Assembly: GCF_003918875.1 (NCBI RefSeq)
Contig: NW_025767224.1
Location: 1,984,001 to 2,048,000, forward strand
From: Haliotis rubra
Taxonomy: Eukaryota
Length of the DNA: 64,000 bases
Reading direction: 5' to 3'
Of this stretch, positions 19,262-62,790 are shown piece after piece. How positions within the stretch are numbered: position 1 is the stretch's first letter; each line of letters opens with the position of its first letter. A model generated the notes under the pieces. It worked only from the letters and a program-made list of their open reading frames with translations. It searched no databases and was not told where the DNA came from. A program made the translations under genes and the position numbers.

Positions 19262-20013
19262 GCCCGTGACGGTCCGGGTTAGAATATTGATCTTCAGTAA
19301 CCCATGCTTGTCTCTACCCGTGACGGTCCGGGTTAGAATATTGATCTTCAGTAACCCATGCTTGTCTCTACCCGTGACGGTCCGGGTTAGAATATTTTCT
19401 TCAGTAACCCGTGACGGTCCGGGTTAGAATATTGATCTTCAGTAACCCATGCTTGTCTCTACCCGTGACGGTCCGGGTTAGAATATTGATCTTCAGTAAC
19501 CCATGCTTGTCTCTACCCGTGACGGTCCGGGTTAGAATATTTTCTTCAGTAACCCATGCTTGTCTCTACCCGTGACGGTCCGGGTTAGAATATTTTCTTC
19601 AGTAACCCATGCTTGTCTCTACCCGTGACGGTCCGGGTTAGAATATTGATCTTCAGTAACCCATGCTTGTCTCTACCCGTGACGGTCCGGGTTAGAATAT
19701 TGATCTTCAGTAACCCATGCTTGTCTCTACCCGTGACGGTCCGGGTTAGAATATTTTTCTTCAGTAACCCATGCTTGTCTCTACCCGTGACGGTCCGGGT
19801 TAGAATATTGATCTTCAGTAACCCATGCTTGTCGCAAGAGGCGACTAACGGGATCGGGTGGTCAGGCTCGCTGACTTGGTTGACACATTTGCGCAGATCG
19901 ATGCTCATGCTATTGGTCACTGGATTGTCTGGTCCAGACTCGATTATTCACAGACCGGCGCCATATAGCTGGAATATTGGTGAGTGCGTAAACTAAACTC
20001 ACTCACTCACTCA
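19262..20013 (+). mobile_element. SINE-like family B copy whose 54-bp 5' segment is tandemly amplified about 10 times
   Basis: Unit cccgtgacggtccgggttagaatattgatcttcagtaacccatgcttgtctcta (19262-19830) runs into the family body gtcgcaagaggcgactaacgggatcgggtggtcagg..gctggaatattg..(actc)n. Other copies lie near 5527, 6327, 16650(-), 21303(-), 23110, 38752, 54735, 60218(-). Confidence 0.8.
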
Positions 20014-26700: not shown

Positions 26701-29700
26701 TTCAAGTACACCCCAGCCACCCACAGGCGCTGAAACAGTGTATGTATATGTGAATCGTAATACAGGTGAGGCCGACTGTTATCTAGACCGGTATACACAA
26801 TAACGTTATATTACATGTTAGTCATCTGTTTGATTGGCATTTTAGGTTGGTGAGTAATAAGAAAGTAAGATTTTGTCATGGATAACAACTTCTTTATTAT
26901 ATATGATGCGACGTTTCGGTATGAATTCTTCTACCGTTGTCAAGCAACGGTATAAGAAATAGCCACTATACCGTTTTATACCGTTGTCAAGCAACGGTAT
27001 AAGAATCATACCGAAACGTCGCATCATATATTATAAAGAAAGTTGTTATCCATAAAGAATCTTACTTTCTTACAAGTTAGTCACCTTAATTACCAAAACA
27101 TTTATTTCAGTCGTTTAATGGTTCGATCGTCGCGTAACATGGAGCTGTTCCTAGTAAACCCCCTCAATGCTAAACTTGTGCTGCTAAAGTTTATCCTAAT
27201 GTCCCTCATATTATCGGAAGTGAGTTAAGTCTTAGAAGGCCAGTTTCGTTCAATGGCTCGATCGTCGCGTAACATGGAGCTGTTCCGAGTAAACCACCTC
27301 AATGTCCCTTCTACTGATCAATCCATCTCTCATACCTCCGGCATCTGTTTTAAACATAGTTGCTACGCTACGTTCATTCAAGACTAGTTGTCGATGTCAC
27401 AAACACTGTTGAAAACTACTTCTGAGGTGCATCAAATCACTAGAACACATAGTTTAAAAATAAAAATAATCAGATTTGGACAATGTCTGTAGTCGCCAGT
27501 AAGGTGTTAATACTGCAATCGACTGACATCCGCATGGCCATCGCCATGTTGGTTACGAACCGGATGTCGGTTACGTCATGCGTATTTTGATGGAACTGAG
27601 CATGGTCTCGTTAGTCCAGCCAATGTAAACTCCTATATTTCCACTTAGTTCAACCAGGATGGAAAAGCGAACGTGTATAGTGAGTTAACTCCCTTGCCTC
27701 GTAGTGATCAACTTCCCTGATATCACCAGCTTTAACATATATTCGCACTTAGTTGTATTTACATTGTGAACAAAAGATAGGATCTCTGTACCGTACCTGT
27801 CCGCTAACATCAAGCTCGAACCACCTATAAGCTCCCTTCGTGAGAATCCCGCCGTGGAACTTGTAGCATTGCCCAGAGTTCAGTGTCGCCTTCACAGTCG
27901 TTCCTGACGTTCCCGCTGCAATTACCGAAAAAGTCAAACGTTTAGTCCCTCACGTGTATTCGAATGCCCGTCTCCGTTTAGGACTAGACATTAATAAAAC
28001 GTCAGACACTCATGTACATATGTAACAGATTCGACCTTCGTGTACGTGTTAACACATCAAACACTCATGTACATATATGACAGATTCGACCTTCGTGTAC
28101 GTGTTAACACATCAAACACTCATGTACATATGTAACAGATTCGACCTTCGTGTACGTGTTAACACATCAAACACTCATGTACATATATAACAGATTCGAC
28201 CTTCGTGTACGTGTTAACACATCAAACACTCATGTACATATGTAACAGATTCGACCTTCGTGTACGTGTTAACACATCAAACACTCATATACATATGTAA
28301 CAGATTCGACCTTCGTGTACGTGTTAACACATCAAACACTCATGTACATATATGACAGATTCGACCTTCGTGGACGTGTTAACACATCAAACTCTCAAGT
28401 ACATATGTAACAGATTCGACCTTCGTGGACGTGTTAACACATCAAACTCTCAAGTACATATGTAACAGATTCGACCTTCGTGTACGTGTTAACACATCAA
28501 ACACTCATGTACATATGTAACAGATTCGACCTTCGTGTACGTGTTAACACATCAAACACTCATATACATATGTAACAGATTCGACCTTCGTGTACGTGTT
28601 AACACATCAAACACTCATGTACATATATGACAGATTCGACCTTCGTGTACGTGTTAACACATCAAACTCTCAAGTACATATGTAACAGATTCGACCTTCG
28701 TGGACGTGTTAACACATCAAACTCTCAAGTACATATGTAACAGATTCGACCTTCGTGTACGTGTTAACACATCAAACACTCATGTACATATGTAACAGAT
28801 TCGACCTTCGTGTACGTGTTAACACATCAAACACTCATGTACATATGTAACAGATTCGACCTTCGTGTACGTGTTAACACATCAAACACTCATGTACATA
28901 TGTAACAGATTCGACCTTCGTGTACGTGTTAACACATCAAACACTCATGTACATATGTAACAGATTCGACCTTCGTGTACGTGTTAACACATCAAACACT
29001 CATGTACATATGTAACAGACTCGACCTTCGTGTACGTGTTAACACATCAAACACTCATGTACATATGTAACAGATTCGACCTTCGTGTACGTGTTAACAC
29101 ATCAAACACTCATGTACATATGTAACAGATTCGACCTTCGTGTACGTGTTAACACATTAAACACTCATGTACATATGTAACAGATTCGACCTTCGTGTAC
29201 GTGTTAACACATCAAACACTCATGTACATATGTAACAGATTCGTGACTAACACTTTAGTCATTCGTGTTCATCTGTCAGACATTTGACATATTATATAAG
29301 AATCAATCAGATACATTTATTATACATGCAAATGAAGAATACAAAAATGATCCGCATGTACAACCAGACTGATATGACGGTTTACAACCTATTTGCCTTA
29401 ATCCTGTTGGGTATTATGCCACATTCACTTGTCAGATTGTAAAGCATGTGATGTGCAAGGATGGTGGAGTAAAGGAGCGTATTGATAACGTTCGTTACAC
29501 AGGCAAATGAAGTCTTAATAAATATATAATGTTTGGTTCCAGTGTTACTGATCAAAGAGGCATGTCCGTTCTATTCGAATGAATCTGAATGCAATTATGT
29601 TATACAAAAAGGATTGATTTGATGAACGAATTGTGTCTCCCATGTGATAAAATAATAAAGCTTGATTTCTGAATCATGCCATTCGTTGCTGCTTGAACAA

Positions 29701-30423: not shown

Positions 30424-31083
30424 AAGTTGTAACGTTCAGGTTGTTAAGTCAGGATGTTCCGTTCAGCGTGTAATGTCAAGTTGTAACGTTCAGTGTGTAA
30501 TGTCAAGTTGTAACGTTCAGCGTGTAATGTCAAGTTGTAACATTCAGTGTGTAATGTCAAGTTGTAACGTTCAGTGTGTAATGTCAAGTTGTTCCGTTCA
30601 GTGTGTAATGTCAAGTTGTTCCGTTCAGTGTGTAATGTCAAGTTGTTCCGTTCAGCGTGTAATGTCAAGTTGTAACGTTCAGTGTGTAATGTCAAGTTGT
30701 AACGTTCAGTGTGTAATGTCAAGATGTTCCGTTCAGTGTGTAATGTCAAGTTGTTCCGTTCAGCGTGTAATGTCAAGTTGTAACGTTCAGTGTGTAATGT
30801 CAAGTTGTAACGTTCAGTGTGTAATGTCAAGTTGTCTATCAGTGTGTAATGTCAAGTTGTTCCGTTCAGCGTGTAATGTCAAGTTGTAACGTTCAGTGTG
30901 TAATGTCAAGTTGTAACGTTCAGCGTGTAATGTCAAGTTTAAACATTCAGCGTGTAATGTCAAGTTGTCACGTTCAGTGTGTAATGTCAAGTTGTAACGT
31001 TCAGTGTGTAATGTCAAGTTGTAACGTTCAGCGTGTAATGTCAAGTTGTTCCGTTCAGCGTGTAATGTCAAGTTGTAACGTTC
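30424..31083. repeat. 27-bp minisatellite
   Basis: Unit gtgtaatgtcaagttgtaacgttcagt; explains the 9-aa-periodic ORFs. Confidence 0.97.
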
Positions 31084-31170
31084 TGGGTGTTACATCAGGT
31101 TGTTACATTCAGGATGTTACGTGAACGAGTTACATTCAGGGCAGTAGGTAATGCTTTCACGTTCAATATA

Positions 31171-31305: not shown

Positions 31306-31819
31306 TATTACGTTAAGTCCTTAGTCCCAGAATGCTAGGTCAAGTTGTTCCAGTGAGGATCCAAGGTAAATTTATTACATTCGGGATGTTACTCGGGAGG
31401 TTGGGTCCTTGTGTTAAGTTAAGGATGTTACATACAGTTGCTACTGTCAGGATGCCACGTCAAGTTCTTACGCTCAGGATAGTGCGCCAGGTTTCTATAT
31501 GCAGGATGTTCCAGAAAGTTGTTATGTACATGAAGTTTAGAGTTGTTACTTGTCGTGATGCAAAATCACCAAATTGCTGGAATCAGCATATTATGTCTTG
31601 CTGGAGTTACTTCAAAGTGTCACATGTTTTCAAAAAGGTTTCAACAAGATGATGCGATGCGTTATTCTCAACAAAATTGAAAACTTGACATACTCATCTG
31701 TGATACGTGAGAGGAGAGGTAAGGATGTATGTAATTCCGTTTAGTTTCTTGATGTCCCATACACATGACAAGGACATGAAGGCTGCTTGAACAAGGTCTT
31801 CACAAAACGATAGGGATAC

Positions 31820-33280
31820 TACGAACAAGGTGTCTTCCCGAAACATTAGGGGACTATGAACAACGCATTGTCTTCCCGAAACATTAGGGTACTATGAACA
31901 ACGCATTGTCTTCACGAACGAGTAGGGGTACTGTGATGCAAAAAATTGTCTTCACGAAACATTAGGGTACTATGAACAACGCATTGTCTTCACGAACGAG
32001 TAGGCGTACTGTGATGCAAAATATTGCCTTCACGAAACATTAGGGTACTATGAACAACGCATTATCTTCACGAAATATTAGGTTACTATGAACAACGCAT
32101 TGTCTTCACGAAACATTAGGGGTACTATGAACAAGGTATTGTCTTCACGAAACATTAGGGGTACTATGAACAAGGTATTGTCTTCACGAAACATTAGGGT
32201 ACTATGAACAACGCATTGTCTTCACGAAACATTAGGGTACTATGAACAAGATATTGTCTTCACGAAACATTAGGGGTACTATGAACAAGGTATTGTCTTC
32301 AGAAACATTAGGGTACTATGAACAACGCATGAACAAGGGTACTATTGTCTTCACGAAACATTAGGGTACTATGAACAAGGTATTGTCTTCACGAAACATT
32401 AGGGGTACTATGAACAAGATATTGTCTTCACGAAACATTAGGGTACTATGAACAAGATATTGTCTTCACGAAACATTAGGGTTACTATGAACAAGATATT
32501 GGGTACTATGAACATTGACGAAACAAGGGGTACTATGAACAACGCATTGTCTTCACGAAACATTAGGGTACTATGAACAAGGATATTGTCTTCACGAAAC
32601 ATTAGGGTACTATGAACAACGAAACATTGTCTTGAACAAGGCATTGTCTTCGAATGACATTAGAAACATTAGGTACTATGAACAAGATATTGTCTTCACG
32701 AAACATTAGGGTACTATGAACAAGATATTGTCTTCATGAAACATTAGGGTACTATGAACAAGGTATTGTCTTCACGAAACATTAGGGTACTATGAACAAC
32801 GCATTGTCTTCACGAAACATTAGGGTACTATGAACAAGATATTGTCTTCATGAAACATTAGGGTACTATGAACAAGGTATTGTCTTCACGAAACATTAGG
32901 GTACTATGAACAACGCATTGTCTTCACGAAACATTAGGGTACTATGAACAAGATATTGTCTTCACGAAACATTAGGGTACTATGAACAAGATATTGTCTT
33001 CACGAAACATTAGGGGTACTATGAACAACGCATTGTCTTCACGAAACATTAGGGGTACTATGAACAAGGTATTGTCTTCACGAAACATTAGGCGTACTAT
33101 GAACAAGGTGTTGTCTTCACGAAACATTAGGGTACTATGAACAAGGTATTGTCTTCACGAAACATTAGGGTACTATGAACAAGGTATTGTCTTCACAAAA
33201 CATTAGGGGTACTGTGATGCAAGGTGTAGTCTTCACGAACGAGTAGGGGTACTCTGATGCAAAATATTGTCTTCATGAAA
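31820..33280. repeat. Minisatellite of about 39-40 bp
   Basis: Unit gtcttcacgaaacattagggtactatgaacaaggtatt; locally scrambled at about 32300-32670. Confidence 0.95.
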
Positions 33281-34541: not shown

Positions 34542-35286
34542 CATTGACTCACATATCTCGTGTATATAGTTTACATCTAAACTGACTCACATGTCTCGTG
34601 TATATAGTTTACATCTACATTGACTCACATGTCTCGTGTATATAGTTTACATCTACATGGACTCACATGTCTCGTGTATATAGTTTACATCTACATTGAC
34701 TCACATGTCTCGTATATATAGTTTACATCTACATTGACTCACATAGCTCGTGTATGTAGTTTACATCTACATTGACTCACATGTGTATATAGTTCACATC
34801 TCACGCTGCACAGAACTACATTGACTCACATGTCTCGTGTATATAGTTTACATCTACATTGACTCACATGTCTCGTGTATATTCATAGTTGACTACATGT
34901 CTCGTGTATATAGTTCACATCTACATTGACTCATATCTCGTGTATATAGTTCTCTACATTGACATGTCTCGTGTATATAGTTCACATCTACATTGACTCA
35001 CATGTCTCGTGTATATAGTTCACATCTACATTGACTCTCGTGTTGACACATCTACATGTCTCGTGTATATTTACATCTACATTGACTCACATGTCTCGTG
35101 TATATAGTTCACATCTACATTGACTCACATGTATCGTGTATATAGTGTACATCATCTACATTGACTCATATACATTACACATGTTTCGTGTATATAGTTT
35201 ACATCTACATTGACTCACATGTCTCGTGCGTATAGTTCTCATCTACATTGACTCACATGTCTCGTGTATATAGTTCACATCTACAC
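34542..35286. repeat. 38-bp minisatellite
   Basis: Unit acattgactcacatgtctcgtgtatatagtttacatct. Confidence 0.95.
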
Positions 35287-35769: not shown

Positions 35770-38384
35770 AACAGCAACAGCACACAACTTTTGTGTCTAT
35801 TTTACGGACAAGATAAACAAAATCAAAGAGGAATTCGATAATGTGGATAGTGAAACTAGCGACACAACAGATTCTACATTGCCTGGAGATCTCAGATTTA
35901 CACTTCAACCGGTCACTGTGGAAGACATTGTCAAGGTATATTGGAAAATCAAAACCCACTACATGTGCGCTGGACCCTATTCCTACAAAATTACTTATGA
36001 AGTATTTAGATGTACTTCTGCCTGTGATCACAAGGATCGTGAATATCAGTCTAGCCACTGATACATTCCCAAATATATATAAACTGACACTGATAAGACC
36101 ACACAATAAAAAGAAGACTTTAGATGTGCAATGCCTTGCAAACTACCGGCCAGTCTCAAACCTCACCTTCATGTCCAAAATTCTGGAGAGTGCTTTTGAC
36201 CTTCACCTGGCAAAGCACCTTTATGAGAACAACCTGGTGAACAAGTTCCAGTCCGCATATCGTCCGAACCATAGCACAGAGAGTGCTCTACTCAGGGTTA
36301 CGAATGATCTGCGGAGCTATGTGGACAAGGTTCCATTGGATCTCTTATCCTGCTCTATCTGTCGGCAGCCTTTGATACTGTTGACCACGGTATACTTACA
36401 GTACGACTACGACAGGAAGTGGGTATATCAGGAATACCACCTTTATGGATACGCTCATAAACTGACGAGCAAAAGAAAGTACACAGGTGTAATTGTTGTT
36501 GCAATCCCAAATATGCGTTCTAACTAATAAAATTATTGAAAAACATTGATTGTATAGAACGCAACCATCATGTTTCATTTGCCAAAAAGCAACCAAAAAC
36601 ATTTGTACGTGTTTTGCACGAATTTTTGCAAAATTGTGATTATTGTCCCATGCACTTTTCTGACAGAGAGTATAAAACCTGTTTGTCGTGAAGACTGAAC
36701 AATCACTAGACAGAAATCTCACGAGGAAATGCCAAGATTGACGTCGGCGCAACGAGAACGGGCCAAAGGAATGACACAAATGGGTGCTTTCAACAGCGAT
36801 ATTGCAAGGACATTGGGTTGAACAAGACAAACCATAATTCGGCTGTTTAACCGTTTCAGTACGACAGGCCAGACATGTGATCGACCCAGAAGTGGACGTT
36901 CCAGAGTCACAACACCCCAAGAGGATCGCTATCTGTGGGTTATTCACCTACGAAACTGGATGTTGACGGTGACGTCATCAGCAGCCACATCATTGGGTCA
37001 TCGCGTAAGCCGATTCACAGTGGCAAGACGACTTCGTCCTGCTGGCATGTATGGGCCTACTGACCGTTGCGTGGAATGGCCTTGACCTTCCAGCATCGTA
37101 GGAACCGTCTGCAGTGGTCATCACTACATCGCTGTTTATTGTTACAATGTCATTTTGCTGATAAAACACGTGTATTGCAGTGTGCTTCAACATACATTTT
37201 CCATTTCATCAAAAGGTTTTGTTATATTTATCTTATTGGAAGAAACACAACCTGTGTACTTTCTTTTGCACATCAGTTAATTTGAGCAACAGACGCCAGT
37301 CAGTTATGCTTGGTGTTACTAAATCTGAAAGTATCGCGCTACCCTGTGGGGTTCCCAAGGATCTGTGCTAGGTCCAGTCCTGTTTGTGCTGTACAGAAGT
37401 AGTCTCAGCTCCAGCCTCAGACAGTATGGGCTGAACCACCATGCATATGCTGACGACACCCAGCTATATCAAGGTTTCAAAGCAAGCGAGCAGTCGGTGC
37501 ACTTGCAAGAACTACTGATTGCACTAAATCAATAAAAACATGGATGGCGTCAAACAGATTAAAACTGAATGATGGAAAAACTGAGGCCTTACTCGGTGGA
37601 CCCAGACAGCGCATCAAACAGTTGAATATCACGTCAGTGGCTGTGGGAGACTCATTCATACCCATTCGCCGACAAAGCAAAGAACCTGGGTGTCATCTTT
37701 GATTCTCCCTTGTCAATGGAAGCCCAAGTTAATCAAGTGTGCCAGACCTGCTACTTCCATCTAAGAAGTATTGGTAATATCCGCCATCTTATTACCAAAG
37801 ACGTAACAAAGACACTAGTCCAACAACTTGTGATGTCCCGCATTGACTACAGCAACAGTCTGTTGTATGTTTTGAGTAAGGATCTGCTGAACAAACTCCA
37901 GAAGGTACAAAATAGGGCAGCTCGTATTGTGAGTCGTGCACCAAAGAGATGCCACATAACACCGGTATTGATGTCCCTACACTGGCTATCAATAGAAGCC
38001 CGGATCCACTTCAAGATCTTGTGTTTTGCCTACCACTGTTTGAATGGTACAGCACCGAGCTATCTATCAGAACTGATCTCACCATACCCGCCTTCACGAC
38101 GTCTAAGCTCTGAAAACCAATGCCTACTTGCAGTACCAAACGCAAGACTAAAATCCTACGGCAACAGATCGTTTCAAGTAGCAGCACCTCAGTTATGGAA
38201 CCCACTACCTCAGAACATTAAAGAATCCCCCACCCTTGAAACATTCAAAACCAACCTAAAAACCTTTCTCTTTAGAAAGTTCTATCCCCACGAACTATCT
38301 CCTCCCGTGAACTTCTCATCTGTGACTATTGTAGCGCCTTGAGCATGCACCTCTGTGGATGGAACCGAGCGCAATATAAATAGA

Positions 38385-45198: not shown

Positions 45199-48100
45199 GT
45201 TGACCCTAATCACTCTTCACGTACAGTGGTAGGCGTGGCATGTGTTGACCTTCATCACTCTTCACGTACAGTGGTAGGCGTGGCATGTGTTGACCTTCAT
45301 CACTCTTCACGTACAGTGGTAGGCGTGGCATGTGTTGACCCTCACTCTTCACGTACAGTGGTAGGCGTGGCATGTGTTGACCCTAATCACTCTTCACGTA
45401 CAGTGGTAGGCGTGGCATGTGTTGACCTTCATCACTTTTCACGTACAGTCAGAGTCGTGGCATGTTTTGACCCTCATCACTGTTCACGTACAGTGGTAGG
45501 CGTGGCATGTGTTGACCGTAATCACGCTTCACTAATAGTGGTAGGGGTGGCATGTGTTGACCGTAATCACGCTTCACTAATAGTGGTAGGGGTGGCACAG
45601 TGGTAGGTGTGGCATGCTTTGAACATGTGTTGACCGTAATCACGCTTCACTAATAGTGGTAGGGGTGGCATGTGTTGACCGTAATCACGCTTCACTTATA
45701 GTGGTAGGAGAGGCATATGTTGACCCTCATCACTGTTCACGTACAGTCAGAGTCGTGGAATGTGTTGACCCTCATCACACCTCACGCACAGTGGTAGGCG
45801 TGGCATGTATTGACCTTCATCACTCTTCACGTACAGGGGTAGGCGTGGCATGTGTTGACCGTAATCACGCTTCACTTATAGTGGTAGGAGAGGCATATGT
45901 TGACCCTCATAAGTCTTCACGTATAGTCGTAGACGTGGCATGTGTTGACCCTCATCACTCTTCACGTACAGTGGTATGCTTGGCATGTGTTGACCCTCAT
46001 CACGCTTCACGTACAGTGGTAGGGGTGGCATGTGTTGACCCTCATCAGTCTTCACGTACAGTCGGAGTCGTGGCATGTGTTGACCTTCATCACTCTTCAC
46101 GTACAGTGGTAGGCGTGGCATGTGTTGACCTTCATCACTCTTCACGTACAGTGGTAGGCGTGGCATGTGTTGACCTTCATCACTCTTCACGTACAGTGGT
46201 AGGCGTGGCATGTGTTGACCTTCATCACTCTTCACGTACAGTGGTAGGCGTGGCATGTGTTGACCTTCATCACTCTTCACGTTCACGTACATGTTTGACC
46301 CTCATCACGAGTGGTAGCACGTCACAGTACAGTCGGGTCGTGGCATGTGTTGACCCTCATCACTCTTCACGTACAGTGGTAGGCGTGGCATGTGTTGACC
46401 CTCATCACTCTTCACGTACAGTGGTAGGCGTGGCATGTGTTGACCCTCATCACTCTTCACGTACAGTGGTAGGCGTGGCATGTGTTGACCCTCATCACTC
46501 TTCACGTACAGTGGTAGGCTTGGCATGTGTTGACCTTCATCACTCTTCACGTACAGTGGTAGGCGTGGCATGTGTTGACCTTCATCACTCTTCACGTACA
46601 GTGGGAGGCGTGGCATGTGTTGACCTTCATCACTCTTCACGTACAGTCGGAGTCGTGGCATGTGTTGACCTTCATCACTCTTCACGTACAGTGGTAGGCG
46701 TGGTACAGTGGTAGGCGTGGCATGTGTTGACCTTCATCACTCTTCATCACTCTTCATGCACAGTGGAGTCTTGGCATGTGTTGACCCTCATCAGTCTTCA
46801 CGTACAGTCGGAGTCGTGGCATGTGTTGACCCTCATCAGTCTTCACGTGTTGAAGTCGGAGTCGTGGCATGTGTTGACCCTCATCAGTCTTCACGCACAG
46901 TCGGAGTCGTGGCATGTGTTGACCCTCATCACTCTTCACGTACAGTCGGAGTCGTGGCATGTGTTGACCTTCATCACTCTTCATGTGCAGTCTGAGTCTT
47001 GGCATGTGTTGACCTTCATCACTCTTCACGTACAGTCGGAGTCTTGGCATGTGTTGACCTTCATCACTCTTCACGTACAGTGGTAGGCGTGGCATGTGTT
47101 GACCTTCATCACTCTTCACGTACAGTCGGAGTCTTGGCATGTGTTGACCTTCATCACTCTTCACGTACAGTCGGAGTCTTGGCATGTGTTGACCTTCATC
47201 ACTCTTCACGTACAGTGGTAGGCGTGGCATGTGTTGACCTTCATCACTCTTCACGTACAGTCGGAGTCTTGGCATGTGTTGACCCTCATCAGTCTTCACG
47301 TACAGTCGGAGTGGTAGCATGTGTTGACCCTCATCACTCTTCACGTACAGTCGGAGTCGTGGCATGTGTTGACCCTCATCAGTCTTCACGTACAGTCGGA
47401 GTCGTAGCATGTGTTGACCCTCATCACTCTTCACGTACAGTCGGAGTCGTGGCATGTGTTGACCCTCATCAGTCTTCACGTACAGTCGGAGTCGTGGCAT
47501 GTGTTGACCTTCATCAGTCTTCATGTGCAGTCTGAGTCTTGGCATGTGTTGACCCTCATCAGTCTTCACGTACAGTCGGAGTCTTGGCATGTGTTGACCT
47601 TCATCAGTCTTCATGTGCAGTCTGAGTCTTGGCATGTGTTGACCCTCATCACTCTTCATGTGCAGTCTGAGTCTTGGCATGTGTTGACCCTCATCACTCT
47701 TCACGTACAGTCGGAGTGGTGGCATGTGTTGACCCTCATCACTCTTCACGTACAGTCTGAGTCGTGGCATGTGTTGACCCTCATCACTCTTCACGTACAG
47801 TCGGAGTCGTGGCATGTGTTGACCCTCATCAGTCTTCACGTGCAGTCTGAGTCGTGGCATGTGTTGACCCTCATCAGTCTTCACGTACAGTCGGAGTCGT
47901 TGTGTGACCCTCATCACTCTTCACGCACAGTCGGAGTCGTGGCATGTGTTGACCCTCATCAGTCTTCATGTGCAGTCTGAGTCGTGGCATGTGTTGACCT
48001 TCATCACTCTTCACGTACAGTCGGAGTCTTGGCATGTGTTGACCCTCATCAGTCTTCACGTACAGTCGGAGTGGTAGCATGTGTTGACCCTCATCAGTCT

Positions 48101-48405
48101 TCACGTACAGTCGGAGTCGTGGCATGTGTTGACCTTCATCACTCTTCACGAACAGTGGTAGTAGAGGCATGTGTTGACCCTCATCACTCTTCACGAACAG
48201 TGGTAGGAGAAGCATGTGTTGACCCTCATCACTCTTCACGTTCAGTGGTAGGAGAGGCATGTGTTGGCCCTCATCACTCCTCACGTATAGTGGTAGGCCT
48301 GGCATGTGTTGACCCTCATCAGTCTTCACGTACAGTCGGAGTCGTGGCATGTGTTGACCCTCATCACTCTTCACGTGCAGTCAGAGTCGTGGCATGTGTT
48401 GACTG
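45199..48405. repeat. 45-bp minisatellite, about 70 copies
   Basis: Unit tggcatgtgttgaccctcatcactcttcacgtacagtcggagtcg, with a gtggtaggcg variant; explains the 15-aa-periodic ORFs on both strands. Confidence 0.97.
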
Positions 48406-48524
48406 TAATCAGGCAAGCAAATGAGTCAGGAACCTCATGTTACATATGTACCATCAGTGGTCATGGTTTCACCCTAGATATCCGGATTAGGCCTATTTTG
48501 GAAACTTGTTCTGTCGTTGTGTTT

Positions 48525-50260
48525 TACTCTGCTATGGTATTCATATATAGTGTCATTGTATTATACTGCTATGGTAATTATAGTGTTACAATTATAGTGT
48601 CATTTTATGCATACTGCTATGGTAATGTGTCATTGCATTTATACTGCCATATGTATTATACTGCTGTGGTAATTATAGTGTCGTTGTATTATACTGCTGT
48701 GGTAATTATAGTGTCATTGTATTATACTGCTGTGGTAATTATAGTGTCATTGTATTATACTGCTATGGTAATTATAGTGTCATTGTATTATACTGCTATG
48801 GTAATTATAGTGTCGTTGTATTATACTGCTGTGGTAATTATAGTGTCGTTGTATTATACCGCTGCTATGGTAATTATAGTGTCATTGTATTATACTGCTA
48901 TGGTAATTATAGTGTCATTGTATTATACTGCTGTGGTAATTATAGTGTCATTGTATTATACTGCTATGGTAATTATAGTGTCGTTGTATTATACTGCTGT
49001 GGTAATTATAGTGTCGTTGTATTATACTGCTGTGGTAATTATAGTGTCATTGTATTATACTGCTATGGTAATTATAGTGTCGTTGTATTATACTGCTGTG
49101 GTAATTATAGTGTCGTTGTGTTATACTGCTGTGGTAATTATAGTGTCATTGTATTTATACTGCTATGGTAATTATAGTGTCACTATATTATACTGCTATG
49201 GTAATTATAGTGTCATTGTATTATACTGCTAAAGTAATTATAGTGTCATTGTATTTATACTGCTGTGGTAATTATAGTGTCATTGTATTATACTGCTATG
49301 GTAATTATAGTGTCGTTGTATTTATACTGCTGTGGTAATTATAGTGTCATTGTATTGTACTGCTATAGTAATTTTAGTGTCATTGTATTTATACTGCTAT
49401 GGTAATTATAGTGTCATTGTATTATACTGCTATGGTAATTATTGTGTCATTGCATTATACTGCTATGGTAATTATAGTGTCATTGTATTTATACTGCTAT
49501 GGTAATTATAGTGTCATTGCATTATACTGCTATAGTAATTATAGTGTCATTGTATTTATACTACTATGGTAATTATAGTGTAATTGTATCATACTGCTAT
49601 GGTAATTATAGTGTCGTTGTATTATACTGTTATGGTAATTATAGTGTTATTGTATTTATACTGTTATGGTAATTATAGTGTCATTGTATTATACTGCTAT
49701 GGTAATTATAGTGTGATTGTATTTATGCTGCTATGGTAATTATAGTGTCATTGTATTATACTGTTATGGTATTATAGTGTTATTGTATTATACTGCTATG
49801 GTAATTATAGTGTCATTGTATTATACTGCTATGGTAGTTATAGTGTTATTGTGTTTATACTGCTATGGTAATTATAGTGTCATTGTATTTATACAGCTGT
49901 GGTAATTGCAGTGCTCATTTATGCATAATGCTATGGTAACTGTTGTGTCATTGTATTATACTGCTATGGTATTTTTAGTGTCATTGTATTATACTGCTAT
50001 GGTAATTTTAGTGTCTTAGAATTCATAAATACTGCTGTGTTAATTGTAGTGTCATTTTATGCATACTGCTATTGTAATTATAGTGTCATTGTGTTTATAC
50101 TGCTATTGTAATTATAGTGTCATTGTATTTATAGTGCTGTGGTAATTGTAGTGTTATTGTATTTATAGTGCTGTGGTAATTGTAGTGTCATTGTATTTTA
50201 TAATTCTATGGTAATTGTAGTGTTATTGTATTTATACAGCTATGGTAATTATAGTGCCAT
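48525..50260. repeat. 33/34-bp AT-rich minisatellite
   Basis: Unit tatactgctatggtaattatagtgtcattgtat. Confidence 0.97.
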
Positions 50261-50889
50261 TGAATTTTATGCAGCTATTCTATTACTTTGGAATGATTTG
50301 TTTTGATTTGTAAACCTAATATATATATTAAACAACTATATTTACGTCTACTGCATGACGTACAGGTCCCGATGTAACACCCGTGTAACAGATGCCTCAC
50401 ATATGTTTGGCGGACTACCGATGGAAGGGAGATAACCGGAGAAGTGGAGAAAATGTAAAATCTTGATGGTGAGATCCTATGCTTAGCAGTTGCTGATACA
50501 GAGAGAAGGTTAATAATGTAGACTGGGCAGATGTTGTGGACCAGGGCGCAATGCTTTACCACATTATCTGGAATGAGAAACGAAGTTGTAAAACGCCCGA
50601 TTGAACTGACTTGATGATGTTGTTTTTGAAGAAGTAGATGGTATGTCATAATTGACTCTGTGACGTCAGATGTCTTCATTTTACTTTACGATGACAAGAT
50701 CAAGAAGAAATGGATGCTCTCAATCTTCTTCAAGATTGCAAGGTGTGCAGGTGTGTTGGTTGGCTTGCAGGTGTGTTGGTTGGCTTGCTATTATGTCATG
50801 AGAGGAAAGTGGGACCTCCTGATACAATGATGAGAAGTCAAGGTCGGGCACTTAGATCTGTTCTGGTCAAGAGCAGGTAACAAGGAGAG

Positions 50890-52315: not shown

Positions 52316-52731
52316 GCAATCCAAGCGAATCATAAGGGGAGACTACAAACGTGTGAAAGTTCCGGACGATGCTATAATATCAATGATCTGCTGACTGTAT
52401 TTTCCCCCATGCGAGGCTATCACCGTTTTCATAGGTCCTGATTTGGTTATTTACAGGCCGCTGTGATATATAGTGCTTGAATATTGCTGACAAATCATAA
52501 ATACTATTGCCACAGAAATCACTCATGCCATTATATAAATACTGAAATGGAGTGAAGCGTCTCGGTCAAAATTTAATAACACTTATGTAGCAACGTAATT
52601 CACAAATGCCTTTAATATATAAAACGATGCATATGTGTCTCCAGGCACACGCTGTGTAAAATATAGCTAGGACACCCATTTACTCACTCACTGATTATTA
52701 ATGGCTACGTTTCGTTCATATAGGATTCAAG

Positions 52732-54154
52732 ATGTCAGTAATGGTCAGTCTTCTAACAGTACTTGTCTGCACTGCCAGTGCCCTACCGTTTCAACAAGGC
52801 ATTGTCATGACACGTGACTTCTGGAGCCATCTTAAACACGAAGTAGAAAATGTCGCACACCAGGTCGGACACGCTGTCGAGGGAGCTGTTGTTGCTAATC
52901 TCGCCAATTCTGCCTCTGCCATTCTTGGTCGAAAACGTGATGTCAACGATGAAAAGCGAGATTTCTGGAGCCATCTTAAACACGAAGTAGAAAATGCCGC
53001 ACACCAGGTCGGACACGCTGTCGAGGGAGCTGTCGTTGCTAATCTCGCCAATTCTGCCTCCGCCATTCTTGGTCGAAAACGTGATGTCAACGATGAAAAG
53101 CGAGACTTCTGGAGCCATCTTAAACACGAAGTAGAAAATGTCGCACACCAGGTCGGACACGCTGTCGAGGGAGCTGTCGTTGCTAATCTCGCCAATTCTG
53201 CCTCCGCCATTCTTGGTCGAAAACGTGATGTCAACGATGAAAAGCGAGACTTCTGGAGCCATCTTAAACACGAAGTAGAAAATGTCGCACACCAGGTCGG
53301 ACACGCTGTCGAGGGAGCTGTCGTTGCTAATCTCGCCAATTCTGCCTCCGCCATTCTTGGTCGAAAACGTGATGTCAACGATGAAAAGCGAGACTTCTGG
53401 AGCCATCTTAAACACGAAGTAGAAAATGTCGCACACCAGGTCGGACACGCTGTCGAGGGAGCTGTCGTTGCTAATCTCGCCAATTCTGCCTCCGCCATTC
53501 TTGGTCGAAAACGTGCCAACGATGAAAAGCGAGACTTCTGCCATTCACGAAGTTGTCGCACACCAGGTCGGAAAGGGAGCTGTCGTTGCTATCTCGCCAA
53601 TCAACGATGTCAACGATGAAAAGCGAGACTTCTGGAGCCATCTTAAACACGAAGTAGAAAATGTCGCACACCAGGTCGGACACGCTGTCGAGGGAGCTGT
53701 CGTTGCTAATCTCGCCAATTCTGCCTCCGCTATTCTTGGTCGAAAACGAGATGTCAACGTTAAAAAGCGAGACTTCTGGAGCAATGAAAAGCAGGAATTC
53801 GAAAACGTCGGTCATCAGTTTGGGCAGATGTCTGAAGGTTCAGCTGTCATTTCAAACACTGGAACAGCAGGGTTTGAGAAACGCGACATTGCAGAAACAA
53901 TGAAGACGTTCTGGGAATGTTTGAAAGATGACTTCCTTGATATCGTCCATGAGGTTGAGGATGTGCTTGAGAACGAACTGCTAAAGACTGAGACAGGTGG
54001 TGTCGAAGACAAGAGAGATGCAGCGAACATTAACGACACAATGGCGGAATTGGCTGCTTTCAGAAAGGATTTTGTAACATGGCTGAATGAGATGTTGTAC
54101 TCAGATCAACACATGAACACAGCGAACATGGGAACTCAGACTAACGCACAATGA
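52732..54154 (+). CDS. Multi-copy secreted peptide precursor (37-aa His-rich amphipathic amidated peptide repeats); one frameshift near 53540
   Basis: Signal peptide MSVMVSLLTVLVCTASA; 144-bp units at 52816, 52960, 53104, 53248, 53392 and 53627 encode DFWSHLKHEVENVAHQVGHAVEGAVVANLANSASAIL-G-RKR-DVNDE-KR. A 94-bp damaged unit at 53533 shifts the frame. Divergent KR-delimited copies and an acidic tail follow to TGA 54154. Confidence 0.88.
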
Positions 54155-58975: not shown

Positions 58976-61701
58976 TCAATTGACGTGAATTCCAAGCATG
59001 CCGAACAACGGGTTCCAGTGAAGCAGTGCTGGTGGAATGTTTGACGCCTCTGCGATCAGGGCCTGAAACAGGAAATCATGTGTAAACTGGACCAGGAACC
59101 ACATCCTGCATACCGCCACCAAGATACGGAGGTGCTGAAATGTAACTGCCATGGCTTCAGCAGATGACGAGAAGCGGTACTACCCAGGTTAACACAATAT
59201 ACAAGTTAAAACATTGATGCAACGGTCAGTTTAAAGAATCATGGGACCTCGGCATTGTTTACCTAAGCTATACCGTAACGTATGGCAGAGTTGCGTCCCT
59301 TGGGCTCACCAGAACCCTGTGATCGTCGGATAGACGCACGGTTTGTCACGCTTATGTTTCTAGGTTTGTCAGCACCATGTTGCTGTGTTTCTAGTCGGTA
59401 CAGTGTATATAATACCACCGTTTGATTCTCGGTACAGTGTATATAACAGCAACGTTTGATAGTCTGTACAGTATATATAACACCACCGTTTGATTCTCGG
59501 TATAGTGAATATAACACCAACGTTTGATTGTCGGTACAGTATATATAACACCACCGTTTGATTCTCGGTACAGTACATATAACACCAACGTTTGATTGTC
59601 GGTACAGTGTATATAACACCAACGTTTGATGGTCGGTACAGTATATATAACACCACCGTTTGATTGTCGGTACAGTGTATATATAACACCAACGTTTGAT
59701 AGTCGGTACAGTGTATATAACACCAACGTTTGATAGTCGGTACAGTGTATATAACACAAACGTTTGATAGTCGGTACAGTGTATATATAACACCAACGTT
59801 TGATTGTCGGTACTGTTTTTACAACAGCAACGTTCGTGCCAGATCATTTGACAGTGTCAACAAAATAATGGTTATCTTACCTGGCTGAGATAACGAGTCA
59901 AGTTGTGGATGTGCCTAACTGGCAGATCTGTGCAGAGAAAACATTGAACAATGTAGTCATCATAGCAAATATGGAACCGGCATATCTTACTCTTGAAAGA
60001 GTGAGATCTATGAAACCACAATCATCTTATATATAGATCGGTAAAAGATTCCGAGTGATATAAAAGTGATGACTTCAACTTTCAAATAGTGCACTTTCTC
60101 TTTATGTCGAGCAAGAGCACATATTTCATTTGTTGATAGGGTTTGTCGCTTTTGTTTTAAGATCAGTTAATATCATTCAACATGCAAACTTAATAGCTAA
60201 AGTCTTTGTTCTAGGGATATGGCGGTGGTCTGTAAATAACTGAGTCTGGACCAGACAATCCAGTGACCAACATCATGAACGTAGATCTACGCAATTGGGA
60301 ACCGATGACACGTGTCAACCGAGTCAGCTAAGGTAAGCTTTAAGACGACATGGCTCCCACACGAGATGAACTGTACGACAGCTAATGAAACCTCCCCCTT
60401 CCTGATATGAGCTGTGAGACAGTCAATGACCCCTACATGTTTCAGCTATCAGACATGTAATATCTCTAACCGAGATGAACGGGAAAACAGTCAATGAACC
60501 CTACGTGATATGAGTTGTAGGAGAGTTCACGACCCTACGTGATATGAGTTGAAGGAGAGTTCACGACCCTACGTGATATGAGTTGAAGGAAAGGTTACGA
60601 CCCTACGTGATATGAGCTGTAAGAGAGGTCATGACCCCTACCTGATATGAGTTGTAGGAGAGGTCACGACTCTAGCCGATATGAGCTGTAAGAGAGATCA
60701 CGACTCTACCTGATATGAGTTGTAGGAGAGGTCACGACCCTACATGATATGAGTTGTAGGAGAGGTCACGACCCTACATGATATGAGCTCTAAGACAGGT
60801 CACGACCCTACATGATATGAGCTGTAGGAGAGGTCACGACCCTACATGATATGAGTTGTAGGAGAGGTCACGACCCTACATGATATGAGCGTGATATGAG
60901 CTGTAGGAGAGGTCACGACCCTACATGATATGAGTTGTAGGAGAGGTCACGACCCTACATGATATGAGCGTGATATGAGCTGTAGGAGAGGTCACGACCC
61001 TACATGATATGAGTTGTAGGAGAGGTCACGACCCTACATGATATGAGTTGTAGGAGAGGTCACGACCCTACATGATATGAGTTGTAGGAGAGGTCACGAC
61101 CCTACCTGATATGAGTTGTAGGAGAGGTCACGACCCTACGTGATATGAGCTGTAGGAGAGGTCACGACCCTACATGATATGAGTTGTAGGAGAGGTCACG
61201 ACCCTACGTGATATGAGCTGTAGGAGAGGTCACGACCCCTACCTGATATGAGTTGTAGGAGAGGTCACGACTCTAGCCGATATGAGCTGTAAGAGAGGTC
61301 ACGACCCTACCTGATATGAGCTGTAAGAGAGGTCACGACCCTACCTGTTATGAGCTGTAGGAGAAAATGGCCCCTACCTGATATGAGCTGTAAGAAAAGT
61401 AATGGCCCCTACCTGAGATGAGCTGTAAGAGAGGTCACGACCCTACCTGTTATGAGCTGTAGGAGAAGTAATGGCCCCTACCTGAGATGAGCTGTAAGAG
61501 AGGTAATGGCCCCACCAAGTCCAGGAACTCCTTCAGCTCATTTTTTTCAGCTGTAGCCACCAGCTGCGCCAACAGGACCCTCTCCTGCTGAGGCAGCCCA
61601 GCCAACACATGTCCTTGTACAAACTCCTGCAGCTTATGCTCTAGCTCCGTAGCATTGCAGGCAACACAGAAGACGATCAGGACAATCACGCTCAGCCTCA
61701 T
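58976..61701 (-). CDS. Small secreted, probably all-helical protein of unknown function (117 aa)
   Basis: Exons 61701-61482, 59927-59881, 59062-58976 (220+47+87 nt, phases match): MRLSVIVLIVFCVACNATELEHKLQEFVQGHVLAGLPQQERVLLAQLVATAEKNELKEFLDLVGPLPLLQLISDLPVRHIHNLTRYLSQALIAEASNIPPALLHWNPLFGMLGIHVN*. An acceptor ctctttccag lies just before the ATG. Confidence 0.75.
59393..59815. repeat. Minisatellite of about 37 bp
   Basis: Unit tcggtacagtgtatataacaccaacgtttgat(t/a)g. Confidence 0.93.
60490..61512. repeat. 34-bp minisatellite derived from the exon end/splice donor of the orphan gene
   Basis: Unit gatatgagttgtaggagaggtcacgaccctacat. The minus strand reads ctctcttacagctcatatca(g/t/c)GTAGGG, matching the real junction at 61482/61481. 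Confidence 0.93.
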
Positions 61702-62180: not shown

Positions 62181-62419
62181 GCAGTGATGTATTGTTGGAT
62201 CAGCCCAACATACACATCTATTTGGAATAATGTCTTATGTATTTTTTAATCGATCCCCGGTCAGATGTTCGTCGTGTCCGCAGTTGGCTTGTTTCACACG
62301 AGTGTCAGTGTTTACAGACATTCAGTCTCTGCTGATGATGAGCCATAGATGGGAGTAGGCAGATAAACTGGTGACTATGTAGCGGTCATCTGGTCAAATG
62401 ACACACTCATTACAAGAAG

Positions 62420-62790
62420 CGCACATGAAACACACGTGAAACACTCAAGCAACAAACATGAAGCACACATGAAACACTCATGAAGCACACGTGAAACAAT
62501 CAAGACACACTCAAGAAACAAACACGAAACACACGTGAAACACTCATGAAGCACACGCGAATCAGTCAAGACACACTCAAGAAACAAACACGAAACACAC
62601 GTGAAACACTCATGGGGCACACATGGAGCACACATGAAACACTCAAGAAACAAACATGAAACACACGTGAAACACTCATGCAGCAGACTGGAAACACGCG
62701 AAACACTCAAGGAGAAAACATGAAACTTACGTGAAACACTCATGAAGCACAGACGAATCGCAAATGAATACATGAAGCACAAATGCAGCA
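62420..62790. repeat. Degenerate CA-rich tandem repeat
   Basis: Recurring gaaacacacgtgaaacactca(t/a)gaa. Confidence 0.8.

What the first reader, a model, noticed from the sequence alone, without database searches (positions are those of the whole stretch)
52732..54154. Polyprotein precursor releasing many copies of a 37-aa His-rich amphipathic amidated peptide
Seen: a signal peptide, then near-identical 144-bp units, each a 37-mer followed by G-RKR and an acidic DVNDE-KR spacer. There are six intact copies, one damaged and two diverged (DFWSNEKQEF.., TFWECLKDDF..). Hydrophobic residues at 2,3,6,10,13,14,17,20,21 give an amphipathic helix, followed by a Gly hinge and a hydrophobic C-half. His sits at 5,8,15,19. 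Net charge is about -2 at neutral pH and about +2 with His protonated. Established: Gly plus basic residues signals convertase cleavage and amidation; tandem copies with acidic spacers occur in magainin and apidaecin precursors; this length and layout match cecropins; His-rich clavanins are pH-activated. Inference: a pH- or metal-switched membrane-active defence or toxin peptide. A novel neuropeptide or pheromone is the alternative. I do not recognise the sequence.
Basis: partly seen in the sequence, partly recalled or inferred. Interest (0 to 1): 0.82.

Follow-up and report, generated by a model that had tools for sequence, protein, structure and literature searches.

The report
Abalone multi-copy amidated peptide precursor gene
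This is an abalone (Haliotis) gene for a secreted precursor that should be cut into six copies of a 37-residue, histidine-striped, helical, amidated peptide; the peptide belongs to an undescribed abalone-specific family and its role (defence or chemical signal) is still open.

Summary
Window 52732-54154 (+) carries a start codon, a signal peptide, six near-identical 144-bp units, one short damaged unit, two diverged units and an acidic tail. Each intact unit encodes a 37-mer, then G-RKR, then DVNDE-KR.

As assembled, the gene therefore lies in two reading frames, and the first stops after five copies.

The gene is the positional ortholog of an intact, single-exon "uncharacterized protein" of Haliotis asinina (346 aa, four copies). 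A paralogous locus in H. rubra encodes a second 37-mer type, also ending Gly-Lys-Arg.

Between species, 10 of 12 unit differences are at third codon positions. dN/dS is 0.09 for the 37-mer. The basic sites and the amide-donor Gly are invariant. This strongly supports prohormone-type processing and amidation.

Residues 1-22 form a significant amphipathic helix. Net charge is about -2.4 at pH 8 and +2.5 at pH 5.

Pfam, PDB sequences, Foldseek and the literature gave no match. It is not a cecropin, magainin, clavanin or latarcin relative.

Function is unresolved. I favour a secreted peptide gated by pH or metal. A signalling peptide is nearly as likely.

The parts
52710..52723 (+). Polypyrimidine tract ending in AG just upstream of the ATG; probable 3' splice site of an intron in the 5' UTR
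   Evidence: Conserved in H. asinina while the sequence further upstream is not alignable. Inference only; there is no transcript evidence.
52732..52782 (+). Start codon and signal peptide (17 residues, MSVMVSLLTVLVCTASA)
   Evidence: Hydrophobic core plus A-x-A before Leu-Pro. The same layout occurs in H. asinina and H. rubra.
52783..52815 (+). Short N-terminal propeptide LPFQQGIVMTR ending in a single Arg
   Evidence: H. asinina has LPSQQGIAVTR.
52816..53532 (+). Five intact repeat units in frame with the ATG (starts 52816, 52960, 53104, 53248, 53392). Each is a 37-mer + Gly + RKR + acidic spacer + KR; unit 5 is one codon shorter in the spacer
53533..53626 (+). Damaged unit: 94 bp instead of 144, with several internal deletions. 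Its length is not a multiple of three, so the reading frame changes here and frame 1 stops at 53617-53619
   Evidence: Absent from the H. asinina ortholog.
53627..53770 (+). Sixth intact unit (spacer DVNVKKR), in the second reading frame as assembled
53771..53884 (+). Diverged unit A (DFWSNEKQEF...GFE-KR, 36 residues + KR, no amide-donor Gly)
   Evidence: Orthologous unit in H. asinina.
53885..54016 (+). Diverged, strongly acidic unit B (..TFWECLKDDFLDIVHEVEDV.., ends KR)
   Evidence: Predicted helix with pLDDT 65-79.
54017..54154 (+). C-terminal tail (45 residues, contains a third degenerate F-x-x-W-L helix) and the stop codon at 54152-54154

Best explanation
**What it is.** The locus is a Haliotis gene with one coding exon for a secretory pre-pro-polypeptide.

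**Inferred pathway** (established prohormone biochemistry applied to motifs that are shown to be conserved):
- Signal peptidase removes about 17 residues.
- Subtilisin-like prohormone convertases cut after each KR/RKR.
- A carboxypeptidase trims the basic residues.
- Peptidylglycine alpha-amidating monooxygenase converts the exposed Gly into a C-terminal amide.

**Products.** This gives six 37-residue peptide amides (five in the frame as assembled), small acidic DVNDE spacers and two or three longer acidic helical peptides from the 3' end.

**The 37-mer.** Its first 22-24 residues form an amphipathic helix. A heptad-spaced hydrophobic stripe (W3, L6, V10, V13, V17, A20, A24) lies opposite a stripe of metal- and proton-binding side chains (D1, H5, H8, N12, H15, H19, E22). 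A small-residue hydrophobic tail follows.

**Favoured function.** The peptide is made in bulk and secreted, as an exocrine or humoral product rather than a classical neuropeptide. At pH 8 it is soluble and anionic. Protonation of His below about pH 6.5, or Zn/Cu binding, would switch on its association with itself, with membranes or with surfaces.

**Confidence by step.** Real gene encoding a processed, amidated multi-copy peptide: about 0.85. Gated secreted-effector function: about 0.35-0.4.
For: **Real gene.**
- The H. asinina ortholog is intact and collinear over about 21 kb.
- Only + frame 1 is open in all four Haliotis genes.
- 10 of 12 interspecies differences per unit fall at codon position 3.

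**Processing.**
- K40-R41 is invariant in all ten aligned units, and the preceding Gly is kept in all eight canonical units of both peptide types. The spacers differ in sequence but stay acidic and end in KR.
- dN/dS is 0.09 for the 37-mer plus Gly, against 0.47 for the tail.

**Bulk production and lineage-specific dynamics.**
- Copy number differs between species: 4 versus 6 plus 1 damaged.
- Copies are homogenised within a species but carry fixed differences between species.
- There is a second locus of two divergently oriented genes in H. rubra.
- No relative was found outside Haliotis among 1.8 billion representative proteins, apart from ambiguous look-alikes.

**Helix and switch.**
- The hydrophobic moment is 0.46, p = 0.0006. 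The charge runs from -2.4 at pH 8 to +2.5 at pH 5.
- The His residues fall within an 80-degree arc opposite the hydrophobic face.
- AlphaFold2 gives a helix with pLDDT about 80 for residues 1-20.

**Against a classical neuropeptide.** The peptide strings are absent from the ganglion transcriptome and peptidome supplements of H. discus hannai.

**Precedents.**
- Spider cytolytic linear peptides are made from complex precursors with anionic linkers that begin and end with Arg (PMC8290080).
- Anionic helical antimicrobial peptides exist in invertebrates (PMC11767717).
Against: - There is no expression, peptide or activity evidence of any kind.
- The peptide has one Lys and four acidic residues. 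At the pH of seawater or haemolymph it would be repelled by bacterial membranes.
- 20 of the first 24 residues, including polar ones, are identical between the two paralog types, and 35 of 37 between species. That conservation is more typical of a ligand with a specific partner than of fast-evolving membrane-lytic peptides.
- The clustering of His on one face is only weakly significant: p = 0.03 over all positions, 0.15 among polar positions.
- Repeat units have low AlphaFold2 confidence in the context of the precursor.
- In this assembly the gene is interrupted, so this particular copy may be decaying.
Confidence: 0.4

Rival explanations
1. The 37-mer amide is a signalling molecule: a lineage-specific neuropeptide or hormone, or a water-borne or mucus-borne pheromone. 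It would act through a specific receptor, and the multi-copy precursor would simply raise the yield, as in FMRFamide-type precursors.
For: - The prohormone grammar is canonical: KR, G-KR/RKR, acidic spacers.
- Purifying selection on the exact sequence is very strong, polar residues included (dN/dS 0.09; 20 of 24 N-terminal residues shared by the paralog types).
- An anionic, soluble peptide suits diffusion in seawater.
- Abalone hypobranchial mucus is reported to release three major water-soluble peptides in large amounts, and tentacles respond to mucus proteins. This comes from PMC5403342 and PMC7069403 summarising Kuanpradit et al. 2012.
Against: - No relative was found in any other mollusc, whereas most neuropeptide families are shared across molluscs.
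- The strings are not in the ganglion peptidome or transcriptome supplements of H. discus hannai.
- By my own knowledge, 37-residue peptides in many tandem copies are unusual for neuropeptides.
- The Kuanpradit sequences could not be read, so the mucus link is untested.
Confidence: 0.35
2. The protein is not cut into peptides. It would work as a whole, as a secreted repeat protein of amphipathic helices, for example a metal-binding, lipid-binding or matrix-associated protein. The basic pairs would then be incidental.
For: - The whole product is predicted helical.
- It has a heptad-like hydrophobic stripe and a His/acid stripe.
- His-rich secreted proteins that bind metals are known (own knowledge).
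Against: - The basic pairs sit at exactly the same unit boundaries in both paralog types while the sequence between them changes. The Gly before the C-terminal pair is kept.
- That pattern is what selection for cleavage and amidation predicts. It has no obvious reason in an uncut protein.
Confidence: 0.08
3. In this genome the locus is a recently inactivated or truncated copy (a pseudogene, or a five-copy truncated allele). Alternatively, the frame break is an assembly artefact in a tandem array.
For: - The damaged unit changes the frame, and frame 1 stops soon after.
- No gene product identical to either ORF is on record.
- In H. rubra the annotated 161-aa model also ends early inside an array that continues for about seven unit-length matches. 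Frame disruptions in draft assemblies of these arrays therefore recur.
Against: - The 175 codons downstream are still open in the second frame and 76% identical to H. asinina, with dN/dS 0.47. Any inactivation must therefore be very recent.
- Five peptide copies would still be made from the first frame.
Confidence: 0.15

Closest known systems
Haliotis asinina 'uncharacterized protein' (P0001, 346 aa; GCA_037392515.2, CM074534.1) and H. rubra LOC124277455 / LOC124277456 (P0012, P0002)
   Same: These are true relatives. P0001 is the positional ortholog: 80% identity, collinear flanks, and the same signal peptide, units, diverged units and tail. The H. rubra genes encode a second 37-mer type with the same N-terminal 24 residues (20 of 24 identical), Gly-Lys-Arg ends and acidic spacers ending in KR.
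   Different: - P0001 has four copies and no damaged unit, and two residues of the 37-mer differ.
- The H. rubra genes lie at a non-syntenic locus and lack the long acidic tail.
- Their C-terminal half is different, and His5 is replaced by Asp.
- None has a described function.
Complex precursors of spider venom linear (cytolytic) peptides: latarcins, cupiennins, lycosins, oxyopinins (Pfam PF10279 Latarcin; PMC8290080, PMC7889660)
   Same: The architecture matches: signal peptide, short propeptide, then many helical amphipathic peptides joined by short anionic linkers that begin and end with Arg. This is a device for cheap mass production of peptides.
   Different: - Spider peptides are cationic, and they are released at monobasic PQM/iPQM motifs rather than dibasic KR.
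- The window protein gives no Latarcin hit at E<=1. Only the metagenomic look-alikes P0003 and P0006 do, and without any single matching stretch.
- The phylum is different.
Amphibian skin magainin/PGLa-type precursors and insect apidaecin multipeptide precursors (own knowledge)
   Same: Tandem copies of a defence peptide separated by acidic spacers and dibasic sites.
   Different: There is no sequence similarity. Their products are cationic or Pro-rich; this one is anionic and His-rich.
Cecropins (Pfam PF00272)
   Same: Similar length (35-39 residues), an N-terminal amphipathic helix, a more hydrophobic C-terminal part and a C-terminal amide.
   Different: - No Pfam or PDB sequence hit.
- Net charge is about -2 rather than strongly positive.
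- This precursor is multi-copy; cecropin precursors are single-copy.
- No hinge is predicted.
His-rich pH-dependent peptides (clavanins) and anionic helical antimicrobial peptides (dermcidin; theromyzin, PMC11767717)
   Same: They share a design idea: activity tuned by His protonation or metal binding, or an anionic amphipathic helix that needs a cofactor. This is a lead from memory and from the review read.
   Different: No sequence or fold-search hit to any of them. They come from single-copy precursors. Nothing has been tested for this peptide.
Molluscan multi-copy neuropeptide precursors (FMRFamide, myomodulin, pedal peptide) and fungal KEX2-processed repeat proteins (PMC6339444, PMC7329392)
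   Same: A signal peptide plus repeated cores flanked by KR sites. In the animal cases Gly serves as the amide donor.
   Different: - Neuropeptide cores are short (4-15 residues) and conserved across molluscs; this one has 37 residues and is seen only in Haliotis.
- The fungal proteins belong to another kingdom.
- The one fungal hit (P0007, Ptychographa) is only motif-level similar.

Membership tests
Haliotis FW-helix 37-mer precursor family (undescribed; P0001, P0002, P0012) | Significant full-length sequence similarity and shared unit architecture | tested here: met
   E = 5.7e-132 and 80% identity to P0001. The unit alignment has invariant W3, S4, K7, E9, E11, N12, Q16, G18, E22, G23, N31, K40 and R41.
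Haliotis FW-helix 37-mer precursor family (undescribed; P0001, P0002, P0012) | Orthologous genomic position | tested here: met
   L001 (H. asinina) is collinear with window ~39.5-62.4 kb. The H. rubra locus is not syntenic, so it is a paralog.
Prohormone-type multi-copy amidated peptide precursors (functional class) | Signal peptide, repeated cores flanked by di- or tribasic sites, Gly before the C-terminal basic site | tested here: met
   The sites are conserved across species and paralogs.
Prohormone-type multi-copy amidated peptide precursors (functional class) | Processed, amidated peptide actually present in tissue or secretion | not testable with these tools
   No peptidomic data could be reached. 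The strings are absent from the one supplement set searched.
Cecropin (PF00272) | Match to the family profile | tested here: not met
   No Cecropin hit at E<=1 in Pfam. No PDB sequence hit.
Cecropin (PF00272) | Strongly cationic N-terminal amphipathic helix | tested here: not met
   The helix is amphipathic (moment 0.46), but net charge is -1 to -2.4 at pH 7-8.
Latarcin / spider linear-peptide complex precursors (PF10279) | Match to the Latarcin precursor profile | tested here: not met
   No hit for either window piece at E<=1 or for P0012 at E<=0.01.
Latarcin / spider linear-peptide complex precursors (PF10279) | Peptides joined by anionic linkers starting and ending with Arg | tested here: met
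   The linker RKR-DVNDE-KR fits the form described in PMC8290080. This is analogy, not membership.
Conserved molluscan neuropeptide families | Orthologs in other molluscan classes or orders | tested here: not met
   Only Haliotis proteins were found by the word search, the profile word search and the exhaustive HMMER search.
Conserved molluscan neuropeptide families | Expression in neurons | not testable with these tools
   No expression data were available here.
Wider family with metagenomic P0003 / P0006 and fungal P0007 | Unit-level similarity beyond what repeats and composition give | tested here: inconclusive
   - Whole-protein E-values of 5e-22 to 3e-5 are inflated by repeats.
- Single-unit Smith-Waterman scores give z = 8.5-9 for P0003 and 4.8-7.7 for P0006.
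- hhalign probabilities are 69.5% and 51.5%.
- By my estimate the single-unit scores (about 25-28 bits) would not be significant on their own across the whole database.

The most novel reading that the evidence does not exclude
The 37-mer would be the founding member of a new class of animal secreted peptides: anionic, amidated helices with a stripe of His and acidic residues. Metal binding or acidification would assemble them into oligomers, pores or surface films. Alternatively they would be the abundant water-soluble mucus peptides of abalone chemical communication. The class may extend beyond abalone. Metagenomic proteins of unknown eukaryotes (P0003, P0006) and a lichen-fungus protein (P0007) show the same signal peptide, then ~50-residue units that start with F/I-W..K, carry V-G-H and end with (G)KR plus an acidic spacer and Arg.
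Probability: 0.15. Interest if true: 0.7.

Novelty: new member of a known kind. Interest (0 to 1): 0.5.

Why it matters
Abalone are farmed and threatened animals, and few of their defence or communication peptides are known. The reviews read here list only hdMolluscidin, mytimacin-6, haliotisin and LGBP-derived peptides.

This locus adds an undescribed, abalone-restricted gene family. It is built to produce large amounts of one precisely conserved 37-residue amide with unusual chemistry: anionic, with four His on one helical face.

- If it is a defence peptide, it would be a rare anionic, switchable type.
- If it is a mucus or water-borne signal, it would give a molecular handle on aggregation and spawning behaviour.

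Either way it offers a clean case of concerted evolution and copy-number change in a coding tandem array. It also shows how such arrays are mis-annotated or broken in draft genomes.

Tried and rejected
- **Pfam hits on the two pieces** (WH_GTF3C1_N, DUF6507, Secretin_N_2, Peptidase_S39, DACZ_N and others). Almost none has a single stretch that passes on its own, and the scores are summed over repeats. Rejected as artefacts.
- **Exhaustive HMMER hits.** P0004 is a phage tape-measure-like protein with W-rich repeats. P0005 is a Kelch-repeat protein annotated as N-acetylneuraminic acid mutarotase. P0008 is a TPR-like repeat protein and P0009 an algal repeat protein. All are repeat-inflated chance matches.
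- **PDB and fold searches.** The PDB sequence searches with one piece and with the unit profile gave nothing meaningful. Foldseek of the unit model against the PDB gave 0 matches. The larger model was too low in confidence to search.
- **Exact-product look-ups** of both window ORFs: not on record.
- **Metagenome DNA scan** with the family alignment: 122 pattern matches, none confirmed.
- **Literature.** Peptide strings were absent from 8.4 million papers and from the H. discus hannai ganglion supplements. The H. laevigata genome paper has no supplements held. Kuanpradit et al. 2012 is not held.
- **Antisense ORFs.** The ORFs of 253 and 256 aa across the array are by-products of a stop-free repeat. 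One antisense frame also shows few amino-acid changes between species, but only + frame 1 is open in all four Haliotis genes.
- **Paralogs in the window.** tblastn found none.
- **Intron across the damaged unit.** I did not look for one, since no tool or relative predicts it.
Full report
**1. What is in the sequence**

The + strand from 52732 has an ATG followed by a 17-residue hydrophobic signal sequence ending A-S-A. An 11-residue propeptide ending in Arg comes next.

A tandem array follows.
- Tandem Repeats Finder reports period 144, 5.1 copies and 98% matches at 52816-53540.
- The first 37 nt of the unit occur six times with at most 1 mismatch. Shuffled sequence gives none.
- Each intact unit translates to a 37-mer (DFWSH...SAIL), then Gly, Arg-Lys-Arg, an acidic pentapeptide and Lys-Arg.
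- Units differ from each other by 0-4 nucleotides.

Between the fifth and sixth intact units lies a short unit, 53533-53626. It is 94 bp instead of 144 and has several internal deletions. Its length is not a multiple of three. Frame 1 therefore runs into a stop at 53617-53619. The rest of the gene is readable only in a second frame. That rest comprises the sixth intact unit, two diverged units and a 45-residue tail ending at the stop at 54152-54154.

I searched the two frames separately throughout. I never joined or repaired them.

**2. It is a real, conserved gene**

The word-indexed protein search found one relative. This is an "uncharacterized protein" of Haliotis asinina, 346 aa, 80% identical.
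- Its gene is a single uninterrupted coding exon.
- It has four 144-bp units, then the same two diverged units and tail.
- Its 21-kb neighbourhood is collinear with window ~39.5-62.4 kb at 65-90% nucleotide identity.

The window therefore comes from another Haliotis species, or a very close relative. This is the positional ortholog.

Of the 12 nucleotide differences between a window unit and an H. asinina unit, 10 are at third codon positions. Nei-Gojobori estimates are:

| Region | dN/dS |
|---|---|
| 37-mer plus Gly | 0.09 (6 synonymous, 2 non-synonymous changes) |
| Whole unit | 0.08 |
| Diverged units plus tail | 0.47 |

One antisense frame is also open across the array. However, only + frame 1 is open in all four Haliotis genes examined. 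A polypyrimidine tract ending in AG directly before the ATG is conserved in both species. This suggests an intron in the 5' UTR.

**3. A small gene family**

An exhaustive HMMER search of 1.84 billion representative proteins with the H. asinina protein found one further abalone protein. This is H. rubra LOC124277456, 132 aa. A profile word search added H. rubra LOC124277455, 161 aa.
- Both lie on one 54.8-kb contig, about 11 kb apart and in divergent orientation.
- That contig is not syntenic with the window.
- They encode a second peptide type, again 37 residues followed by Gly-Lys-Arg and a spacer EISAD-KR.

In the alignment of units of both types and the first diverged unit, these positions are invariant: W3, S4, K7, E9, E11, N12, Q16, G18, E22, G23, N31 and the basic pair K40-R41. 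F2, H15 and V26 are nearly so. The first 24 residues are 20 of 24 identical between the two types. The C-terminal 13 residues and the spacers differ.

Three observations together are what selection for proteolytic release and amidation predicts.
- The cleavage sites and the amide-donor Gly are conserved.
- The spacers diverge.
- The released core is strongly constrained.

Within a species the copies are almost identical, while all copies share fixed differences between species. Copy number also differs: 4 versus 6 plus 1 damaged. That is concerted evolution of the array.

The H. rubra array continues for about seven unit-length matches beyond the point where the annotated 161-aa model stops. 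Frame disruptions inside these arrays therefore recur in draft assemblies. The break in the window may be an assembly error or a real, recent lesion. One assembly cannot decide this.

**4. Properties of the peptide**

- Residues 1-22 have a helical hydrophobic moment of 0.46, against 0.165 +/- 0.08 for shuffles (p = 0.0006). The C-terminal 15 residues are moderately hydrophobic with little moment.
- On a helical wheel the hydrophobic stripe W3-L6-V10-V13-V17-A20-A24 spans 100 degrees. The stripe D1-H5-H8-N12-H15-H19-E22 spans 100 degrees on the opposite side.
- The four His fall within 80 degrees. This is modestly unusual: p = 0.03 over all positions and 0.15 among polar positions.
- The computed net charge of the amide is -2.4 at pH 8, -1.1 at pH 7, 0 at pH 6.5 and +2.5 at pH 5.
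- AlphaFold2 with the unit alignment gives a single helix over residues 2-47. Mean pLDDT is 72, about 80 over the first 20 residues, and there is no break at Gly23.
- In the context of the precursor the repeat units score below 50. The two C-terminal helices score 65-79.

**5. Comparison with known families**

Nothing known matches by sequence or fold.
- The Pfam hits are repeat artefacts without a convincing matching stretch. No antimicrobial-peptide or neuropeptide family appears at E<=1.
- The PDB sequence searches with a piece and with the unit profile give nothing. Foldseek gives nothing.
- The peptide strings occur in no paper of the library. They are also absent from the supplements of the H. 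discus hannai ganglion transcriptome and peptidome study.
- A 2025 review lists hdMolluscidin, mytimacin-6, haliotisin and LGBP-derived peptides for abalone. None is like this.

By architecture the closest animal analogue is the complex precursor of spider venom linear peptides. There, many amphipathic helical peptides are joined by anionic linkers that begin and end with Arg (PMC8290080). Those peptides are cationic, use monobasic motifs and are unrelated in sequence. Fungal KEX2-processed repeat proteins are the analogue in another kingdom.

**6. Possible distant relatives**

The exhaustive search also returned three proteins with a strikingly similar plan: a signal peptide, then about five units of 50-56 residues.
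- P0003 comes from a JGI metagenome.
- P0006 comes from an ENA metagenome. Its units end in Gly-Lys-Arg plus an acidic spacer ending in Arg.
- P0007 comes from the lichen fungus Ptychographa.

Their units start with G/F-F/I-W-x-x-L/V-K and carry V-G-H at about the same distance. P0003 and P0006 give whole-protein Latarcin (PF10279) scores without any single matching stretch.

Their E-values are inflated by the repeats.
- Single units give Smith-Waterman z-scores of 8.5-9 for P0003 and 4.8-7.7 for P0006.
- Profile-profile probabilities are 69.5% and 51.5%.
- By my estimate the single-unit scores, about 25-28 bits, would not be significant on their own across a database of this size.

Homology is open. 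Convergence on one design is equally possible. The other four hits (phage tape-measure-like, Kelch, TPR, algal repeat protein) are noise. A DNA-pattern scan of JGI metagenomes found nothing more.

**7. Mechanism**

Shown:
- A conserved secreted repeat precursor.
- Conserved cleavage and amidation motifs.
- A strongly constrained 37-mer.
- A significant N-terminal amphipathic helix.
- A charge that flips sign around pH 6.5.

Inferred from established prohormone biochemistry: signal peptidase, prohormone convertase cleavage after KR/RKR, carboxypeptidase trimming and amidation by PAM. These would yield six identical or near-identical 37-residue amides (five in the frame as assembled), plus acidic by-products.

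The function is inferred only. I favour a bulk-secreted peptide whose self-association or binding to membranes or surfaces is gated by His protonation or metal binding.
- For this reading: the multi-copy, lineage-restricted, copy-number-variable gene family, the His/acid stripe, and absence from the ganglion peptide lists.
- Against it: the anionic charge at physiological pH, and the residue-level conservation, which looks more like a ligand.

A signalling role (neuropeptide, hormone or mucus or water-borne pheromone) is almost as likely. Secondary sources say that abalone hypobranchial mucus releases three major water-soluble peptides and that tentacles respond to mucus proteins. The primary paper could not be read. 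An uncut structural protein is unlikely, given the conserved basic pairs at the unit boundaries.

**8. Verdict**

The processing interpretation is well supported. The cecropin-like label is not supported. The defence-versus-signal question needs expression and peptide data. The peptide family is new, and its sequences are annotated only as uncharacterized. The kind of gene, a tandem multi-copy amidated peptide precursor, is well known.

- No conclusion rests on them.
- The comparisons with those families rest only on the negative tool searches cited above and are marked as leads.

All short strings typed into tools were copied from tool output for the window or its relatives.

Noticed in passing
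window 7584-7786, 11972-12833, 19263-19833, 23997-25232, 27995-29243, 30424-31112, 31796-33280, 34542-35285, 45199-48403, 48639-50266, 59394-59834, 60498-61504, 62413-62751: The window is unusually dense in minisatellite arrays with periods of 27-55 bp and up to 72 copies. The long ORFs in them (for example 11915-12880, 45656-46714, 46754-47917, 48306-49232) look like by-products of periods divisible by three. They have no signal peptide and no credible Pfam hit.
   Followed up: partly
window 45199-50266 versus L001 2965-3878: The 45-bp and 33-bp satellites upstream of the gene exist at the orthologous place in H. asinina, where they occupy under 1 kb against about 5 kb in the window.
   Followed up: partly
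window 21570-22037 (-) and 35841-36527 (+): These are fragments of mobile elements: a DDE_3 transposase piece (E = 1.5e-12) and a weak reverse-transcriptase (RVT_1) piece just below the Pfam threshold. They were not analysed further.
   Followed up: no
L005 10001-11040 (H. rubra contig QXJH01002215.1): The annotated 161-aa model LOC124277455 ends early inside its own repeat array. Unit-length matches continue to about seven in all, and the middle two are disturbed. The gene model is probably truncated by frame errors in the draft assembly.
   Followed up: partly
L001 9313-9926 versus window ~52657-52688: H. asinina carries about 600 bp between the conserved upstream block and the coding exon that the window lacks. 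In addition, the H. asinina annotation starts at the second of two conserved in-frame ATGs.
   Followed up: no
window 52783-53561 (-): Two antisense ORFs of 253 and 256 aa run through the array. One antisense frame shows as few interspecies amino-acid changes as the sense frame, because third codon positions coincide. It is interrupted by stops in the relatives.
   Followed up: yes
L003 571-1473 and L004 88-1041: Two metagenomic proteins of unknown eukaryotic origin (P0006, P0003) share the same repeat-peptide architecture. They score on the Pfam Latarcin precursor profile only when summed over repeats. The L003 flanks have only 24-28% G+C.
   Followed up: partly
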